This document shows, in pieces, positions 13,201 to 53,223 of a DNA stretch of 64,000 bases (position 1 is its first letter; each line of letters starts with the position of its first letter). The notes beneath the pieces are model-generated. The model worked only from the letters and a program-made list of their open reading frames with translations. It did not search any database and was not told where the DNA came from. The stretch is from Macrostomum lignano (Eukaryota), in the NCBI GenBank assembly GCA_002269645.1, contig NIVC01001267.1, positions 200,165-264,164 of the forward strand, read 5' to 3'. The translations under genes were made by a program, and so were the position numbers.

Positions 13201-13285
13201 CTATGGCAACGGCTGGAGTGGCTTCAGTGTCGACGGCGGCGGCGGCGCCGCTACTGTCATCTTCTTCGCTGGCGCAAAAAGAAGA
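5687..13285 (-). CDS. ACIN1: Acinus (apoptotic chromatin condensation inducer). Exons 13285-12968, 11929-11759, 11372-11218, 10916-10593, 10031-9425, 8857-8766, 5887-5687; possible ATG-only first exon at 18288-18286
   Basis: Acinus-type RRM (LKVTGLVRPFTPQQLRELL...WLDRIKTRCY...WPKGNSRALKVDF), RSB motif LLDQLFRKTCTTPFIYWMPL and an RS/RD-rich C-terminus. Splice phases are consistent between exons. Confidence 0.92.
5942..6378. repeat. 22-bp minisatellite in the last ACIN1 intron
   Basis: Unit GGGATTT(C/A)TGAATGGGGAATTT. Confidence 0.92.
7205..7241. repeat. (GACA)n microsatellite
   Basis: Perfect GACA run. Confidence 0.95.
7722..8700. repeat. ~20-bp monomer array with a 101-bp higher-order repeat
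   Basis: The 101-bp unit starts at 7851, 7952, 8053, etc. Monomeric units follow after ~8350. Confidence 0.92.
8987..9416. repeat. 30-bp minisatellite in an ACIN1 intron
   Basis: Unit AAACTGAGGTCAGGGAGGGGTTATGACACC. Confidence 0.96.
10130..10410. repeat. Degenerate tandem repeat (AAAATCGCC...ATCAATGATT) in an ACIN1 intron
   Basis: Recurring AAAATCGCC / ATCAAT(G/A)ATTCCT motifs at roughly 35-40 bp spacing. Confidence 0.6.
10950..11143. repeat. 28-bp minisatellite (same unit as 20650-21140)
   Basis: Unit CTGGGAGGCTGGCCCAGCAACTGAGGAT, diverged copies. Confidence 0.9.
11400..11735. repeat. 31-bp minisatellite
   Basis: Unit CATTGCGGGAAGTGAGGTGGGGCTGTG(T/C)GTA. Confidence 0.95.
12113..12740. 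repeat. Two related TTGTTGC(T/C)ATGG arrays (~20/21-bp units, then ~39-42-bp dimers)
   Basis: GGGATCCTTGTTGCTATGGGA units, then TTGTTGCCATGG..TGTCTTGTTGCTATGGGACGGGGGATAC. Confidence 0.92.
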
Positions 13286-20649: not shown

Positions 20650-21140
20650 GGTGACCCAGCAACTGTCACTCTGGGAGGCTGGCCCAGCAACCGAGGGTCT
20701 GGGAGGCTGGCCCAGCAACCGAGGGTCTGGGAGGCTGGCCCAGCAACTGAGGGTCTGGGAGGCTGGCCCAGCAACTGAGGATCTGGGAGGCTGGCCCAGC
20801 AACTGAGGGTCTGGGAGGCTGGCCCAGCAACTGAGGATCTGGGAGGCTGGCCCAGCAACTGAGGATCTGGGAGGCTGGCCCAGCAACTGAGGGTCTGGGA
20901 GGCTGGCCCAGCAACTGAGGATCTGGAGGCTGGCCCAGCAACTGAGGATCTGGAGGCTGGCCCAGCAACTGAGGGTCTGGGAGGCTGGCCCAGCAACTGA
21001 GGATCTGGGAGGCTGGCCCAGCAACTGAGGGTCTGGGAGGCTGGCCCAGCAACTGAGGGTCTGGGAGGCTGGCCCAGCAACTGAGGGTCTGGGAGGCTGG
21101 CCCAGCAACTGAGGGTCTGGGAGGCTGGTCCAGCAACTGA
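20650..21140. repeat. 28-bp minisatellite downstream of the Rab9 stop
   Basis: Homogeneous CTGGGAGGCTGGCCCAGCAACTGAGG(A/G)T. Confidence 0.96.
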
Positions 21141-21277
21141 GAGACTTTGCAGTTTGCTGTGAAGGCAATCTACTCTGAAGTAAAGACCCCAAAACTACTA
21201 CTAACGAGTAGAGCAGACAGACAGGCCCACAGAGCCAGAGGCCCAAAAAGGTTAGGAACAATCCGGATCAGACACGG

Positions 21278-22395
21278 TCAGCAGCAGTTAAAGCCGCTCC
21301 TCTTGCCGCCGCTGCCACCAAGCTGACCGGAGGAGCTCCCGCCGTCGCCACCAGCTCGGACTCGAATCCTCCCTGTGGAAGTCGCGGTAGTTGACGAAGT
21401 TGCGGCTGCAGCCTCCGCCGTGGCCGATTCAGCTTTGGCCCGGGCCAACCACGCGGCCGCAACGTGACTGAAAGCGGCGTCAACATTGTCAGAACTTTTA
21501 GCCGAGGCAGTCAGATGCCGCATGCCGTACTGGTTGGCCCACGCATCGGCATCTTCCACTGACACTTCGGCCAATTCTACGTCGCTTTTATTGCCAACTA
21601 GTAGGAACGGGAACTTCTGCCCGTCACTTTCCAGTACGTCTGAGTAGTGAAAGAACTCCTGGCGCCACATGTCCACGTTGGTGAAGGAGCGGCGATCGTC
21701 TAGGGCATACACTAGGATGCACGCATCTGCGCCTCTGCGGCGGGTGGTTTGCGGAGTTCGCTTGATTTAAGAGCAACACCAACCCCACTCTCTGCCCTGT
21801 ACGACACCCACCCCACTCTCTGCCCTGTCCGACACCCACCCCACTCTCTGCCCTGTCCGACACCCACCCAACTCTCTGCCCTGTCCGACACCCACCCCAC
21901 TTTCTGCCCTGTTCGACATCCACCCATTCTCCGCCGTACAACACCCACCCGATTCTCTGCCCTGTCCGACAACCACCCCACTCTCTGCCCTGTCCGACAC
22001 CCACCCCACTCTCTGCCCTGTCCGACACCCACCAAACTCTCTGCCCTGTCCGACACCCACCCCACTCTCTGCCCTGTCCGACACCCACCCCACTCTCTGC
22101 CCTGTTGGGCACCCACCCCATTCTCTGCTCTGTGAAGCCCAGCTTTTAAGACAGCTAATCATTCTCACCTGTAAAATGGAGTCCGCAAAGATCGATACCT
22201 CTCCTGTCCCGCAGTGTCCCAAATCTGCAGAGTAAAATGCATACCATCAATAGTAAGCTCTTTAACTAAGAACTCAACACCGATAGTGTGCTGCGGTCGC
22301 TGATCGAAGCGCTGGTGCACGTAGCGCGTCATTAGAGACGACTTGCCGACGCCACCGTCGCCAAGTAAGATGACCTTTAGAAGCTGGGAGCGCGG
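21278..22395 (-). CDS. RAB9: Rab9-family small GTPase, exons 22395-22169 and 21734-21278; start codon not found
   Basis: [70 protein letters not shown] and a C-terminal CC prenylation motif. [10 protein letters not shown] and EF.YY/HY.D..FPF match Rab9. Confidence 0.9.
21779..22135. repeat. 28-bp minisatellite in the Rab9 intron
   Basis: Unit CGACACCCACCCCACTCTCTGCCCTGTC. Confidence 0.95.
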
Positions 22396-22494
22396 CTGTA
22401 AATATAATTTACAGGGCAGAGTATATCAATACAGGATATGTTTCCATAGAAACTAGGGACCGTGTTACTGTCGCTAAGTAGTGGACAATGAAGT

Positions 22495-23350
22495 CTCTGT
22501 AGCTCTTAAATAGGAGAAACTGACCCCTCAATAGTAGCTTTTAAATAGGACAATGACCCCTCTGTAGCTCCTAAATAGGACAATGACCCCTCTGTAGCTC
22601 TTAAATAGGACAATGACCCCTCTGTAGCTCCTAAATAGGACAATGACCCCTCTGTAGCTCTTAAATAGGACAATGATCCCCCTGTAGCTCTTAAATAGGA
22701 CAATGACCCCTCTGTAGCTCTTAAATAGGACAATGACCCCTCTGTAGCTCCTAAATAGGACAATGACCCCTCTGTAGCTCTTAAATAGGACAATGACCCC
22801 TCTGTAGCTCCTAAATAGGACAATGACCCCTCTGTAGCTCTTAAATAGGACAATGATCCCCCTGTAGCTCTTAAATAGGACAATGACCCCTCTGTAGCTC
22901 CTAAATAGGACAATGACCCCTCTGTAGCTCTTAAATAGGACAATGACCCCTCTGTAGCTCTTAAATAGGACAATGATCCCTCTGTAGCTCTTAAATAGGA
23001 CAATGATCCCTCTGTAGCTCTTAAATAGGACAATGACCCCTCTGTAGCTCCTAAATAGGACAATGACCCCTCTGTAGCTCCTAAATAGGACAATGACCCC
23101 TCTGTAGCTCCTAAATAGGACAATGACCCCTCTGTAGCTCCTAAATAGGACAATGACCCCTCTGTAGCTCTTAAATAGGACAATGACCCCTCTGTAGCTC
23201 TTAAATAGGACAATGACCCCTCTGTAGCTCTTAAATAGGACAATGACCCCTCTGTAGCTCCTAAATAGGACAATGACCCCTCTGTAGCTCTTAAATAGGA
23301 CAATGACCCCTCTGTAGCTCTTAAATAGGACAATGACCCCTTCTGTAGTT
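22495..23350. repeat. 30-bp minisatellite upstream of the Rab9 acceptor
   Basis: Unit CTCTGTAGCTC(T/C)TAAATAGGACAATGACCC. Confidence 0.97.
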
Positions 23351-24039
23351 CCCAAATGGGGAACAATGATCTCTTCTGTCGCAATACCAACAGCTAGAGC
23401 CTCCTAAACACAATGCAAACAGTAAAAAATGAGCAAGACCAATCTACAAAGCTTGCCACAGAAACGGACAAGAGACAGAGATAAACAAATTCAAGCTAGC
23501 TTTTTATTTATATATATAGTATGCAAATTTATAGATTTGTTTCGCAGTCTTGTACCAAAAAGATCTTCCTTTGCGATACAATAATTATTATAATAGTAAT
23601 TAATATTTTTTTATTAAAGAAAATAGCTGCATATACGCTCGTAAATCGAACTTAGCAAGGAAACCAATGCACTGCAGTCTGTCGTTAGTGCCGCTTACTT
23701 ATTGATCGAGTAGACTGCGCTTCCTTTTGCACTAAACTTCAACTAAAAAATGATGGCTTCAGACAAACATGACAAGATTCTGATTTGTGTTAACTAGCAA
23801 ACTTTATCGCCGCTGAATAAACAGAACCAACTAACTAATTTAGCCGCTTTAAGTTTAAGAAGAAATTTCATGAAACTAACAGTTACAAAACAAGACGGGC
23901 AGTAATACACGGGTAGATGGGTATCTACTTTGATATCTAATTATGTTAAAAAAAACTGTCACCAAGGCTAGAGGCTTTTAAAACGCAATTTAGAAACTTT
24001 TAGAAACCTTTATAACTGTCCCCGGCTGCTTTTAGGTGT

Positions 24040-27000
24040 TCTATAAAACTACAGATCTAGATGGAGGTAATGATGGATGGGCGATATGATGGTTAGGGAT
24101 GTTGGAGAGATGGGGAGATAAGGATATTGGGGAGATGGGGATATGGGGATATTAGGGAGATGGGGATACTTGGAAGATGAGGATGAGGGATATTGGGGAG
24201 ATTGGGGATATGATGGCTGGGATATGATGGCTGGGGAATATGATGGCCGGGGGATATGATGGCTAGGGGAGATGGAGGATACGATGGCTGGGGGATATGA
24301 TGGCCGGGGATATGATGGCTAGGGGAGATGGAGGATACGATGGCTGGGGGATATGATGGCCGGGGGATATGATGGCTAGGGGAGATGGAGGATACGATGG
24401 CTGGGGGATATGATGGCCGGGGGATATGATGGCTAGGGGAGATGGAGGATACGATGGCTGGGGGATATGATGGCCGGGGATATGATGGCTAGGGGAGATG
24501 GAGGATACGATGGCTGGGGATATGATGGCCGGGGGATATGATGGCTAGGAGAGATGGAGGATACGATGGCTGGGGGATATGATGACCGGGGGATATGATG
24601 GCTAGGGGAGATGGAGGATACGATGGCTGGGGGATATGACCGGGGGATATGATGGCTAGGGGAGATGGAGGATACGATGGCTGGGGGATATGATGACTGG
24701 ACTGCGCATCTAGGCTCCAGTGCATTAAGAACTGCTCAGCCTAGCTAGCTGCTTACCCAGCCCCACCCGCAGCCTCAGCCTCGGCAGCCAGAATGCTGGG
24801 CATAATCCTGGTGAACACGATGCCCATGCCTTCAATCAGGCCCAGCAGCACTGCGCCAATCAGAGCTTGAGCAACCATCGCGGCCGGTCCCTGCCGCACA
24901 GCTAGCAGAGCTCCGGTCGCGGCGCCAGACATGATGCTATTGTACGGGTCCTCTTTCTGTCGCAGGTAGATCAACGAGCACTCGGTGGTTGCAAAAGTGC
25001 CGCCCCACATTGCGAAAGCGCCACCCAAAGCCGGGGCTCGTTGGCGCACGTTGGACAGAGCCGAGATCAGGCGCATGTGCTGGCTGGATGGAGCAGTACG
25101 GTAGCCTTTGTAAAAGTACACCAGAGTGCCGCCGATAGCGCCCATTGTGTAGGCGCCGCCAAGATCAGATACAATGCGCCATGGGCTGGTTTGACAATAA
25201 TGGTTGGGGGGAGGCACAATGACTTCCACAGGCTTATATGCAATCATTTTCCAAATATCTTATTGTGGTATTACATAAGCTTATGTGGAACACAGATTCT
25301 AAAATAGCTAGATGGGCCACTCAGGCATATATACTTAGTAAAACAGCTTCCTACTTTCAGTTCAGTAGCAAAGAAGAATATAAAAGCTATTTTATAAAAA
25401 TAAAGGCAGCTGAAATGACTTTGATAAGTTTAGAAGCCCAAGCTTTCAGGCCTAAACAACTTGCTAATTGGTTCAGGCATAGTGTACATTAGCCAGTCCA
25501 CTGAAATGTACATGGCAGCTTTAGGCTGGAATTCCAAGAAAGGCAATAAAAATTGGGGAAGGGATAGTGTGAAAAGGTATGGTTGGAAGGTTTAAGCTGA
25601 GGGGTAAAGGCCAATAAATGAGCCTTGTCTTATAAAATACATTAAAATGCTTTAGTTTAACTTACTATTGAACTGAAAATAGTTTACATATAAATGTGCA
25701 AAGTGCATAGACCTTATAGTATATATGGTACTGACTAAGCATAATGGCTCAAGCACAAGCATTTGGGTGTCATGGGAACAAATGATTTATTGGGAATGGG
25801 AACAAGACAGACTTTTCTATAGCCTATAGAGGTCCAGAGATCTTGCATACTTTCCATTGCATTGTCAATTTTGAAAATTTATTACTAGAATAAAATGATT
25901 TAGATATTTAATCCAAAAAGGACAAAGCTACAAAACTAAGCTAGATTTCTTAAAATCATAAAATAAATTTATGTTTTATATATTTATAGTTATAAAGAGC
26001 AATGAGCCTAAGCTCATATTGTAGACTACTTTAATTTCATTTATTACTTTATAATAATTATGGTTAAAATTAAAGACTATTTAGTAATAGAGTATAGTCA
26101 TTAATAAATGAACTTTTATTTAGTTAACAAATGTTCTTTATTTACAAGCCATTCATGGCTGCTGAGCTGCAAATGTCTACGGACATTTACTTTGTGAGCA
26201 TAGCTTGTACTCCTATTGTATGAAAAGAGCCACAAAATATAATGAAAGAGTAAAAATTTCTATTGACATGAACTAAAAAGCTGATACTTAAAATAATTAA
26301 AGGACTGGAAATCATTTCTAAGAAAACCAACAATGACCTTTTAGGAAGACAATTGCCTTTTTTATCTAAAAACTTTCTTATATGTTACAAGTAAAATATA
26401 AACTTTTTGAAACATTTCATGCTTACTTCAAGTTCTAGTTTTCTTATTACATAAGATAAGATTTTTATAAAAAATTGCACAACTACAAAATTTTTATTAG
26501 TGCACACAGAATGTATCTATCATTTTGTACAAAAATCCTATCCTAGATTTTTGCTAGGCCCTAGTAACGAAAATGGATATAATATAATCCCTTCTTGCAG
26601 TAGCTATATCCATACCATAGTCAGGAAGGTGGCAAGTGCACGCGGGAATCAATTTATGGAAAAATCCTTGGTGCATGCCAATGTACGCCAATTTTTTAAA
26701 ACCCTTAACATGACATTTCTGTTGCACGCCAAAAATCTTGAATACCAAAAATCATGTACGCCTCATGTACGTGTGATTTGAATATTAACCATATTAGATA
26801 CTATTTTTAAATAAATTTTCTACTATGTTAAACAAAGTTTATATAAAAAAGGAAATTCGCTACAAAGAACATAGTGAGTATCAAAAACTTTTTCTTCACA
26901 TTTCAAGAAACAAATAAACTAAAAGTCTACAAGAGTCACAAAATAAGAGCATTTAAAAGTTATTGGATATTTTAATTTTAATGTAGGCTGTAGAGTGTAG

Positions 27001-28275
27001 GCCTGGCTGTAGCCTCAACTAGTTGGTTTAATCAATATTCAAATTCAATTATTCACATTTAACTTTATATATTGTATATATATAGTGTATACATCTATAT
27101 CTGACTTATTGATATACTGTCAGTTTGTAATTGCACGCCAAGGTTACACGCCAAGTAAAAAACTTGTACGCTGAAAATTTAGGCGTGGCTTGAGACCCCT
27201 ATTTGCACGCCAAAATTTTAGTGTGGCTTGTGCACGCGGGAAAATTCCCGTGTGCAAGCCACCTTCCTGAGTATGGTATCCATAGCAATGATAATTGATA
27301 AAACTAATTTGATTAAGCCTTATTGATAGCCTGTCATAACATGTCTAATTAGTGCCTAAGCTGTTTTCTAATCCTAGGCTTAATGGTATTAACAATTTGT
27401 AAAGTAGGCCTACATAACATTATAAATTATACCCATAGCCATAGGAATCCACACTCAGGATCATGTCATGTACGTTGGAAATTTGTGGCGCACATTCGGG
27501 ACAGCTGGCATACACTTGGCATACAAAATTTTTGAAAGGGTCTTCTGGTGTACACCTTGTCGTATATACAATTGGCGTACCCTGCATGGCACATATACAA
27601 AGCGCATACTGCATGGCGCACATGAGGAGGCTATGCCACAGCTCCTGCAAAAGACAAAATCAAAGAATGTAAAATGCATGAAGTGTGAAATTTTGCACAA
27701 AGTTTAACCATGATTTTGCAAATATATTGTAACAACAATTGACAACCATTGCTTCATTTAAAATATTCTCTAAATTGTGTTTTATACTTTTTTTCTTTAT
27801 TTCTGAAATTAAAAACATAAATTTTTTTAAATCTTTAATTGATAGGGCCTAATCTTTACTTGCAATTACAAAACGCTATGTTCAACTTACAATATATTGT
27901 GATTTTGTGTATATTGCACATTTTTTTACATTAGGATTAGGATTTAGGACTGGCACACCTGGCACACTTGTGCATTTTGCCTGGCATTACCTGGCGCACA
28001 CCAAAAAAAATTTTGGGGTGGATTCTGGCGCACACATAGCATGATTCTGACTATGGCCTGCTTGACTAGGCTAAGCTATAGCAACAATTTTTCAAGTATT
28101 AAAACTTATAAGGGGCCCTAAAAGTACAGCAAAACTAAACATTGTCATTGGTAATTGCTTGCTAGGTGGCTAGGCCTATACTAAAGAAAAAAGCACATAG
28201 GGAATGAATTTATTTCATTAGACATCGCCGACTTTGTCATCTAACTTACCAAGGATCTCTTGTATACTCTTCCAT
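24040..28275 (-). CDS. TIMM17: Mitochondrial import translocase subunit Tim17. Exons 28275-28250, 25185-24756 (or to stop at 24753), probable mini exon 24055-24040
   Basis: Spliced start MEEYTRDPC|[19 protein letters not shown], then [35 protein letters not shown] and LLGLIEG, all typical of Tim17. Confidence 0.93.
24095..24700. repeat. ~57-bp composite minisatellite, probably in TIM17 intron 2
   Basis: GGGGATATGATGGCTAGGGGAGATGGAGGATACGATGGCTGGGGGATATGATGGCC repeats. Confidence 0.92.
26615..27276. mobile_element. MITE, family A
   Basis: TIRs CCATAGTCAGGAAGGTGGC / GCCACCTTCCTGAGTATGG, perfect 8-bp TSD TATCCATA, internal TG(C/T)ACGCC repeats. Confidence 0.88.
27449..28056. mobile_element. 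MITE, family A-related
   Basis: TIRs CCACACTCAGGATCATG / CATGATTCTGACTATGG. Its 3' subterminal part resembles 16230-16339. No matching TSD. Confidence 0.65.
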
Positions 28276-53214: not shown

Positions 53215-53223
53215 GTGTACTCC

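What the first reader, a model, noticed from the sequence alone, without database searches (positions are those of the whole stretch)
22380..22460. Rab9 has no genomic start codon: a candidate for initiation on the spliced-leader AUG
The CDS starts at a strong phase-0 acceptor (TTATATTTACAG|CCG CGC TCC CAG CTT CTA AAG, 22395). The frame upstream hits TGA before any ATG, and the next in-frame Met lies after the P-loop. The best upstream donor (~23696) is preceded by TAA, and I found no ATG-bearing phase-0 exon up to TIM17. Flatworm spliced leaders are known to end in AUG that can act as initiator. SL+acceptor gives [12 protein letters not shown], almost the length of vertebrate MAGKSSLFKVILL. 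The gene would then depend on trans-splicing to be translated. In-frame phase-0 acceptors also precede ACIN1 (13285), Msx (53215) and GPCR TM1.
Basis: partly seen in the sequence, partly recalled or inferred. Interest (0 to 1): 0.75.

Follow-up and report, generated by a model that had tools for sequence, protein, structure and literature searches.

The report
Rab9 gene started by spliced leader
This flatworm (Macrostomum lignano) Rab9 gene has no start codon in the genome and almost certainly takes its AUG from the trans-spliced leader RNA, a real case of a mechanism known in flatworms since 2006.

Summary
The window is Macrostomum lignano contig NIVC01001267.1. A two-exon Rab9 gene on the minus strand (22395..22169 and 21734..21278) opens directly after the acceptor TTACAG with CCG CGC TCC CAG. 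An in-frame TGA lies 33 nt upstream with no ATG between, and the next in-frame ATG falls after the P-loop.

The published M. lignano spliced leader (SL) ends in ATG. SL plus exon gives [20 protein letters not shown], the same N-terminal length as the shortest of 117 Rab9 homologues, so exactly one codon is missing.

No usable ATG exon exists in the 2,357-nt spacer up to TIM17, and TIM17's only donor is out of phase. Three homeologous copies and an old intronless paralogue (dS about 0.9) share the arrangement under purifying selection. Two independent public annotations have no Met. The RNA-seq-based annotation names TIM17 and Rab9 as genes g1 and g2 of one transcriptional unit.

I could not obtain SL-Rab9 junction reads, so trans-splicing at 22395 is strongly inferred, not shown.

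The mechanism is established (Cheng et al. 2006; Echinococcus, Schistosoma) and already noted for Macrostomum. This is a new member of a known kind, useful mainly for annotation. Interest is low to moderate.

The parts
22396..22401 (-). 3' splice acceptor TTACAG. It matches the published M. lignano trans-splice acceptor motif [T/C]TNCAG and is the proposed SL addition site, with the junction between 22396 and 22395.
   Evidence: motif from PMC8629364. The acceptor is kept in the homeologues L001 and L003, and an acceptor sits at the same codon in the paralogue L004/L005.
22169..22395 (-). Rab9 exon 1 (227 nt), coding from its first base: [20 protein letters not shown]...TPFYR. It contains no 5' UTR and no start codon.
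   Evidence: It is 73% identical to human RAB9A residues 4-78 in tblastn.
22426..22428 (-). In-frame TGA that closes the frame 33 nt upstream of the exon, with no ATG in between.
22330..22332 (-). Next in-frame ATG (Met at codon 22 of the genomic ORF). It lies after the P-loop (22362..22339), so initiating here would delete strand beta-1 and the P-loop.
21735..22168 (-). The only intron (434 nt, GTGAG...CAG, phase 2). Most of it is a 28-nt tandem array (21776..22133).
21278..21734 (-). Rab9 exon 2, ending ...GFNCC-TGA. The C-terminal CC is the Rab prenylation motif.
22402..24752 (-). The TIM17-Rab9 spacer (2,357 nt counting the acceptor hexamer), read here as TIM17 3' UTR plus the Rab9 outron. 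It holds a 30-nt tandem array (22483..23348), repeats at 24094..24700, AATAAA signals at 23615..23610 and 23508..23503, only 6 ATGs on the gene strand, and one GTAAG (23698) preceded by an in-phase TAA.
   Evidence: Repeat-adjusted length is 884 nt.
24753..28275 (-). Upstream TIM17 gene on the same strand, with its own ATG (exon 1 28275..28250, exon 2 25185..24753). It is annotated as gene 1 of the transcriptional unit of which Rab9 is gene 2.
13283..13285 (-). First codon (TCT) of the next downstream gene (RSB-motif, ACIN1-like). It also begins directly after an acceptor (TTTGCAG), with an upstream in-frame stop and no ATG.

Best explanation
The Rab9 mRNA gets its 5' end by SL trans-splicing at the acceptor 22396|22395. 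The 35-nt M. lignano spliced leader, ...TTATTGCATG, is joined directly to CCG CGC TCC. The leader supplies the cap, the whole 32-nt 5' UTR and the only AUG, and that AUG is in phase 0 with the exon. Translation from it gives the 228-aa Rab9 [20 protein letters not shown]...FNCC.

The pre-mRNA is probably a TIM17-Rab9 precursor (an operon-like transcriptional unit), and the spacer is discarded as an outron. Without trans-splicing no functional Rab9 can be made.

- Shown here: the sequence anatomy, the species, the absence of any cis alternative in the spacer, the purifying selection, and the conservation of the arrangement in homeologues and the paralogue.
- Taken from the literature: the SL sequence ending in ATG, the acceptor motif, the rules of the annotation pipeline, and the ability of flatworm SL AUGs to initiate translation.
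- Inferred: that the SL is really added at 22395, and that the ribosome starts on its AUG.
For: 1. Species and SL. The best hit is M. lignano Rab-9A at 99% identity, and the window is identical to NIVC01001267.1 over 13,118 nt. The SL is CGGTCTCTTACTGCGAAGACTCAATTTATTGCATG, and 30-39% of genes are trans-spliced (PMC8629364; PMC5730564). The SL has a single ATG, at its 3' end.

2. Anatomy. The acceptor TTACAG fits [T/C]TNCAG. The exon codes from base 1, with an upstream TGA and no ATG.

3. One codon is missing. With the SL Met, the first P-loop glycine is residue 13. That is the minimum among 117 Met-initiated homologues: 14 have 13 and 47 have 14, for example [14 protein letters not shown]. 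The Pfam Ras domain starts at residue 8, model position 1.

4. No cis alternative. The 2,357-nt spacer has 6 ATGs and 5 ATG...|GT phase-0 candidates, none with a GT[AG]AG donor. The sole GTAAG is preceded by TAA. The TIM17 exon 1 donor is phase 2 and would give [14 protein letters not shown].

5. Annotations. The three NCBI models (PAA49617, PAA70079, PAA77318) are 227 aa, 'partial', and start at PRSQ. The UniProt/WormBase models start YLQPRSQ, which is the translated acceptor tract. TIM17 and Rab9 are Mlig032386g1/g2, and in L003 Mlig004945g2/g3. Under the pipeline described in PMC5730564 this means one transcriptional unit cut at experimentally mapped SL or poly(A) signals. A 5'-partial ORF beginning at the acceptor implies that the transcript model starts there.

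6. A functional gene. Homeologue dN/dS is 0.08-0.31. The CDS is 0.7-1.5% diverged against about 4-9% for flanking DNA.

7. An old arrangement. The paralogue (dS 0.88, dN 0.055) keeps an acceptor before the same CCG codon and also has no ATG.

8. Precedent. More than 40 S. mansoni cDNAs need the SL AUG (PMC9851317). In E. granulosus, 143 of 187 SL clusters are full length only with the SL ATG (PMC3510090).
Against: I saw no SL-Rab9 junction read or cDNA. The Met-prefixed proteins are not in the 15-billion-protein collection, and the junction 24-mer is absent from the metagenome contigs. Those collections evidently hold no M. lignano RNA-seq assemblies, so the absence says little.

The g1/g2 naming shows a cut of a transcriptional unit, but a cut can also rest on a poly(A) site. 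That the transcript starts at 22395 is my inference from how 5'-partial ORFs are called.

The paralogue's acceptor is also used in cis in one gene model (P0126). Cis use of such acceptors therefore occurs in this genome.

Translation from the SL AUG has not been demonstrated in M. lignano for any gene, as far as I could find.
Confidence: 0.85

Rival explanations
1. A cis-spliced upstream exon, missed by the annotations, supplies the ATG and a few N-terminal residues.
For: Acceptors are shared between cis- and trans-splicing in flatworms (PMC12582326). The paralogue's acceptor is joined in cis to an upstream gene in model P0126. Five ATG...|GT phase-0 strings exist in the spacer; the best is MKFLLKLKAAKL|gttagt at 23871..23836.
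Against: None of the five has a GT[AG]AG donor, and the one canonical donor is preceded by TAA. TIM17's donor is out of phase. Deep RNA-seq-based models of three copies contain no such exon. No extra residues are needed, because the SL Met alone restores the family's N-terminal length.
Confidence: 0.06
2. Translation starts without the SL AUG, either at the internal Met22 or at a near-cognate codon in an unspliced transcript (CTG at 22419..22417 is in frame).
For: An in-frame CTG lies between the TGA and the exon in the window copy. Met22 is the first genomic in-frame ATG.
Against: Met22 lies after the P-loop, so the product would lack beta-1 and GDGGVGKS and could not bind nucleotide. That fits poorly with purifying selection over the whole CDS, including codons 1-21. 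The CTG is absent from the homeologues L001 and L003, whose upstream frame reads *ELQRVHCHCK[F/L]YLQ, and from the paralogue.
Confidence: 0.03
3. The gene is a 5'-truncated pseudogene or an assembly or annotation artefact.
For: All public models are flagged partial or fragment.
Against: Three separately assembled homeologous copies share the structure. Their ORFs are intact, dN/dS is 0.08-0.31, and the CDS is far better conserved than flanking DNA. An old paralogue keeps the same arrangement with dN/dS of about 0.06. All GTPase motifs and the CC prenylation end are intact.
Confidence: 0.02
4. Rab9 is made as a fusion, cis-spliced from a more distant upstream gene, as in the 1009-aa ARID4-like::Rab9 model at the paralogue.
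For: Model P0126 joins ...KARRRK (L005:12912) in frame to the paralogue's acceptor 4.3 kb downstream.
Against: At the window locus the upstream gene is TIM17, and its only donor is out of frame. The stand-alone model is annotated in all three copies, and in the other paralogue copy (P0002). A Rab with a long N-terminal fusion is not expected to be the normal product (established knowledge of Rab structure).
Confidence: 0.03

Closest known systems
Flatworm mRNAs that use the 3'-terminal AUG of the spliced leader as initiator Met (Cheng, Cohen, Ndegwa and Davis 2006, J Biol Chem 281:733; called 'slORFs' in PMC9851317)
   Same: The SL ends in AUG. The acceptor is in phase 0 with an ORF that is open from the first exon base. 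No genomic in-frame AUG preserves the conserved N-terminus. The SL supplies the 5' UTR and the start codon.
   Different: The documented cases are in parasitic Neodermata (Schistosoma, Echinococcus, Taenia). This one is in the early-branching free-living M. lignano, and trans-splicing and initiation are inferred here, not shown. The arrangement is also shown to predate a paralogue duplication.
SL-resolved operons of M. lignano (Ustyantsev and Berezikov 2021, PMC8629364) and of C. elegans
   Same: The two neighbours are on the same strand. The annotation names both as parts of one transcriptional unit. The repeat-adjusted spacer is under 1 kb. The downstream gene begins at a trans-splice-type acceptor.
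   Different: The raw spacer is 2.36 kb, swollen by tandem repeats. I could not verify the TIM17 poly(A) site or continuous transcription. In C. elegans the SL carries no initiator AUG.
Rab9A/Rab9B small GTPases (late endosome to trans-Golgi traffic)
   Same: It is 55-61% identical to named Rab9A/B proteins across Metazoa. The P-loop, DTAGQE, GNKSD, SAK and C-terminal CC are all present.
   Different: The C-terminal tail is long and rich in Ala, Ser and Gly, and there is no genomic start codon.

Membership tests
SL-AUG-initiated flatworm mRNAs (Cheng et al. 2006 class) | The species has a spliced leader whose 3'-terminal triplet is AUG | tested here: met
   The species was identified as M. lignano. 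The published SL is ...TTATTGCATG (PMC8629364; also PMC10468722). No SL gene lies in the window itself.
SL-AUG-initiated flatworm mRNAs (Cheng et al. 2006 class) | The mRNA is SL trans-spliced at the acceptor in question | tested here: inconclusive
   The evidence is indirect only. The acceptor fits the trans-splice motif. The CDS is 5'-partial exactly at the acceptor in three copies. The g1/g2 naming shows a cut transcriptional unit. No junction read was found.
SL-AUG-initiated flatworm mRNAs (Cheng et al. 2006 class) | The SL AUG is in frame with the main ORF, with no intervening stop | tested here: met
   SL plus exons translates to a 228-aa ORF, MPRSQ...FNCC*.
SL-AUG-initiated flatworm mRNAs (Cheng et al. 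2006 class) | No genomic in-frame AUG can give the conserved N-terminus, so the SL AUG is required and not merely in frame | tested here: met
   There is an upstream TGA and no ATG. The next ATG comes after the P-loop. The N-terminal length equals the family minimum only when the SL Met is added.
SL-AUG-initiated flatworm mRNAs (Cheng et al. 2006 class) | Translation actually initiates on the SL AUG | not testable with these tools
   This needs ribosome profiling, N-terminal proteomics or a reporter assay.
Rab9 subfamily of Rab GTPases | Ras-type GTPase fold with G1-G5 motifs and a C-terminal Cys prenylation motif | tested here: met
   Pfam Ras PF00071, E = 4.6e-52, residues 8-170. [22 protein letters not shown] and ...NCC are present.
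Rab9 subfamily of Rab GTPases | Closest named relatives are Rab9A/Rab9B and not other Rabs | tested here: met
   Nearly all named hits among the top 120 are Rab-9A/9B or 'Rab9'; the rest carry generic names, and none names another Rab. Identity is 50-61%. No phylogeny was made.
M. lignano operon (definition of PMC8629364) | Adjacent same-strand genes, repeat-adjusted intergenic distance under 1 kb, downstream gene SL trans-spliced | tested here: inconclusive
   Same strand and adjacent. The distance from the TIM17 stop to the acceptor is 884 nt after subtracting tandem repeats. The transcriptional-unit name is shared. Trans-splicing of Rab9 is inferred, not shown.

The most novel reading that the evidence does not exclude
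The intronless Rab9 paralogue (L004/L005) may have arisen by retroposition of an SL-bearing Rab9 mRNA. Its upstream sequence (CTCTGAC...AGACTGAATTCCCCATTGC-CGCAG|CCG) would then be a decayed spliced-leader relic in which the ATG was lost and an AG acceptor arose at the same junction. A retrocopy would in that way have regained SL trans-splicing, and dependence on the SL AUG, at exactly the old splice point. My evidence does not exclude this, but the resemblance is not statistically significant.
Probability: 0.07. Interest if true: 0.5.

Novelty: new member of a known kind. Interest (0 to 1): 0.25.

Why it matters
For biology, it adds a clear case from an early-branching, free-living flatworm of a conserved housekeeping GTPase whose translation depends entirely on trans-splicing. 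The paralogue comparison shows that the arrangement is old and stable.

The practical value is greater:
- **Annotation:** the public M. lignano Rab9 entries (PAA49617, PAA70079, PAA77318; UniProt A0A1I8I6N5 and relatives) are flagged partial or begin with a translated splice acceptor. They are probably complete proteins lacking only the SL-encoded Met. The same is likely for many other 'partial' M. lignano models. The ACIN1-like gene at 13285 in this window is a second model that opens at an acceptor.
- **Experiments:** anyone designing N-terminal tags, knock-ins or transgenes for such genes needs to know that the start codon is not in the genome.

Tried and rejected
1. **Upstream ATG exon.** I enumerated every ATG...|GT phase-0 string on the gene strand from 22396 to 24752. 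There are five, none with a canonical donor. Rejected.

2. **TIM17 lending its ATG by cis-splicing.** Its only donor is phase 2 and gives a stop after six codons. Rejected.

3. **Conserved near-cognate start in the outron.** The in-frame CTG exists only in the window copy. Rejected.

4. **SL relic upstream of the intronless paralogue.** Anchored alignments of the SL to the 45 nt before the acceptor were compared with 8,826 background tiles and 3,000 shuffles. The empirical p was 0.02-0.15 depending on scoring. Not significant, so kept only as a lead.

5. **Direct transcript evidence.** An exact look-up of four Met-prefixed products found none in the collection. The junction 24-mer had 0 hits in metagenome contigs. 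Gene IDs were absent from paper texts and supplements.

6. **SL RNA gene in the window.** None found. Rfam and tRNA scans of the window were empty.

7. **Locus tag of the ACIN1-like gene.** A protein search with its first 110 residues returned nothing, so I could not tell whether it belongs to the same transcriptional unit.

8. **Cheng et al. 2006 itself** is not held in the library. I cite it through PMC9851317, PMC3510090 and PMC12582326.

9. **Zero synonymous changes in the first four codons between the paralogues.** Given 46% of identical-residue codons with synonymous changes elsewhere, the probability is about 0.09. Not significant.

Full report
**What is there**

The finding lies on the minus strand. 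Read in gene orientation, the sequence is ...ctgccctgtaaattatatTTACAG|CCG CGC TCC CAG CTT CTA AAG GTC ATC TTA CTT GGC GAC GGT GGC GTC GGC AAG TCG. The exon runs from 22395 to 22169 and ends at a GTGAG donor. A 434-nt intron follows, most of it a 28-nt tandem array. The second exon (21734..21278) ends ...GFNCC-TGA.

The 227 codons encode a Rab GTPase. The Pfam Ras match has E = 4.6e-52. tblastn gives 73% identity to human RAB9A over exon 1. Named homologues are Rab9A/9B throughout.

Walking upstream in frame from 22395 gives ten sense codons and then TGA (22428..22426), with no ATG. The nearest ATG (22447..22445) is out of frame. The next in-frame ATG (22332..22330) lies after the P-loop (22362..22339).

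**Whose genome**

The best protein hit is Macrostomum lignano Rab-9A at 99% identity. The window is identical over 13,118 nt to contig NIVC01001267.1 of assembly GCA_002269645.1 (Mlig_3_7). This species has one spliced leader, CGGTCTCTTACTGCGAAGACTCAATTTATTGCATG. It is 35 nt long and ends in ATG. It is added to 30-39% of genes at acceptors whose top motif is [T/C]TNCAG (PMC8629364; PMC5730564). The acceptor here, TTACAG, fits that motif. The SL contains no other ATG.

**Exactly one codon is missing**

Joining the SL to the exon gives an uninterrupted [23 protein letters not shown]...FNCC*. In 117 Rab9-like homologues that start with Met, the first glycine of the P-loop is never earlier than residue 13. 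Fourteen have 13 and 47 have 14. The SL-initiated protein has it at 13 and lines up residue for residue with N-termini such as [14 protein letters not shown] and MSKSSLLKVVLLGD. The genomic exon by itself is one residue shorter than any homologue.

**Is there a cis alternative?**

The upstream neighbour on the same strand is TIM17 (28275..24753, with its own ATG). The 2,357-nt spacer has six ATGs on the gene strand. Five ATG...|GT strings are in phase 0, and none has the GT[AG]AG donor typical of this species. The only GTAAG (23698) follows CAA TAA.

TIM17's single donor sits after 26 nt of coding sequence. Joined to the Rab9 acceptor it would read [14 protein letters not shown]. An in-frame CTG in the outron of the window copy is absent from the other copies.

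**Replication inside the genome**

M. lignano is a hidden polyploid. Two further homeologous copies (L001, L003) keep the acceptor, the missing ATG and an upstream in-frame stop, although the sequence more than about 25 nt upstream of the acceptor differs by indels.

The three coding sequences differ at 0.7-1.5% of sites, with dN/dS of 0.08-0.31. Flanking DNA is roughly 4-9% diverged. The gene is therefore under purifying selection and is not a pseudogene.

A paralogue (L004/L005, 60% protein identity, intronless) has dS of 0.88 and dN of 0.055 over the first 46 codons. It still carries an AG acceptor immediately before the same CCG codon, an upstream in-frame stop and no ATG. The arrangement is therefore old and stable.

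**What the public annotations say**

The three NCBI models (PAA49617, PAA70079, PAA77318) are 227 aa, labelled 'partial', and begin at PRSQ. The UniProt/WormBase models begin YLQPRSQ, where YLQ is simply the translated tat-tta-cag of the acceptor. That these two sets come from separate pipelines is my own knowledge of the two projects. Neither found a start codon.

In the Mlig_3_7 annotation, transcriptional units assembled from RNA-seq were cut into genes by the TBONE pipeline, at experimentally mapped SL-read peaks and poly(A) sites, and ORFs were then called with TransDecoder (PMC5730564). TIM17 and Rab9 are BOX15_Mlig032386g1 and g2 here, and Mlig004945g2 and g3 in L003. At two of the three loci they were therefore one transcriptional unit that was cut between them.

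A 5'-partial ORF that starts exactly at the acceptor implies a transcript model that starts there. If the model had extended upstream past the TGA, the ORF would have been called from Met22. This last step is my inference from how such callers work, not a read I have seen.

After subtracting tandem repeats, the spacer is 884 nt. That is under the 1-kb operon criterion of PMC8629364.

**What could not be shown**

I found no SL-Rab9 junction sequence. The Met-prefixed proteins are not in the protein collection. The junction 24-mer is not in the metagenome contigs. The gene IDs are not in the papers or supplements held. These sources evidently contain no M. lignano transcript assemblies, so the absence is uninformative. 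Trans-splicing at 22395 and initiation on the SL AUG remain inferences, though strong ones.

**Comparison with what is known**

Initiation on the SL AUG is an established flatworm mechanism:
- Cheng et al. 2006 found the SL AUG in frame in 28% of trans-spliced S. mansoni transcripts and required by more than 40 cDNAs (summarised in PMC9851317).
- In E. granulosus, 143 of 187 SL-bearing clusters are full length only with the SL ATG, and its use is conserved across Neodermata (PMC3510090).
- All reported flatworm SLs end in ATG (PMC12582326).
- The Macrostomum genome paper PMC10468722 states that the SL probably contains the final ATG as a translation start codon.

The Rab9 case is thus a well-supported new member of a known class, not a new mechanism. 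I found no paper that names this gene, or that quantifies the class in M. lignano.

**Side observations**

- The next gene downstream on the same strand (RSB-motif, ACIN1-like) is annotated as starting at 13285, directly after TTTGCAG, with TCT as its first codon and an upstream stop. An in-frame Met at codon 53 means its dependence on the SL AUG cannot be argued from homology.
- The Msx site at 53215 has an ATG three codons into the frame.
- One model of the paralogue (P0126, 1009 aa) joins an ARID4-like upstream gene in frame to the paralogue's acceptor. This shows cis use of such an acceptor in at least a transcript model.
- The sequence upstream of the intronless paralogue loosely resembles the SL, but not significantly.

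**Verdict**

Novelty is 'new member of a known kind'. Interest is 0.25. The main value is in correcting annotation and in experimental design for this model organism.

Noticed in passing
window 13285 (minus strand); L006:19111: The NCBI model of the RSB-motif (ACIN1-like) gene starts at TCT directly after the acceptor ttcatTTGCAG, with an in-frame stop 8 codons upstream and no ATG. It is a second CDS in this window that opens at a trans-splice-type acceptor. An in-frame Met exists at codon 53, so dependence on the SL AUG is not proven.
   Followed up: partly
L004:7998-8660 and L005:17268 onward (paralogue, BOX15_Mlig028660g2 / Mlig008114g1): The Rab9 paralogue is intronless, whereas the window gene has one intron. 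Its upstream 45 nt loosely resemble the spliced leader (AGACTGAATT..ATTGC against AGACTCAATTTATTGC). Empirical p is 0.02-0.15, so the resemblance is not significant. It may be a retrocopy of an SL-bearing mRNA.
   Followed up: partly
L005:3001-17930 (model P0126 / PAA89222.1): This 1009-aa gene model fuses an ARID4-like protein (RBB1NT, ARID and chromo domains; last exon ends ...KARRRK at L005:12912) in frame to the Rab9 paralogue's acceptor 4.3 kb downstream. It is either an uncut transcriptional unit or real cis use of a trans-splice acceptor.
   Followed up: partly
L005:2998-3003: The ARID4-like model is flagged partial and starts at GAT, yet the genome has ATG immediately before it (tttcagtcATG|GAT). 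This may be a quirk of SL trimming or transcript-boundary placement in the annotation.
   Followed up: no
window 20655-21141, 21776-22133, 22483-23348, 24094-24700: Four separate tandem-repeat arrays (units of 28, 28, 30 and 57 nt) surround this one small gene: downstream of the stop codon, in the intron, in the outron, and in the TIM17 3' region. The 30-nt outron array abuts the acceptor within about 25 nt in homeologues L001 and L003, but lies about 90 nt away in the window copy.
   Followed up: partly
window 53215 (+ strand): The candidate Msx 5' end ctctctgctcag|GTG TAC TCC ATG has an AG followed by an open frame, but with a genomic ATG at codon 4. The SL AUG would give at most a 4-residue extension.
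   Followed up: partly
window 11278-32395 (minus strand): Four consecutive annotated genes lie on the same strand with none annotated on the other: a GRIP-domain gene, TIM17, Rab9 and the ACIN1-like gene. This could be a larger co-oriented, operon-like cluster.
   Followed up: no
L001:3501-3995 against window 28275-24753: The TIM17 homeologue in L001 is annotated as a single-exon, 164-aa protein with a different N-terminus ([26 protein letters not shown]...). The window and L003 copies use a distant 26-nt first exon ([14 protein letters not shown]..., 152 aa). The 5' ends differ between homeologues, either through alternative use or through annotation.
   Followed up: no
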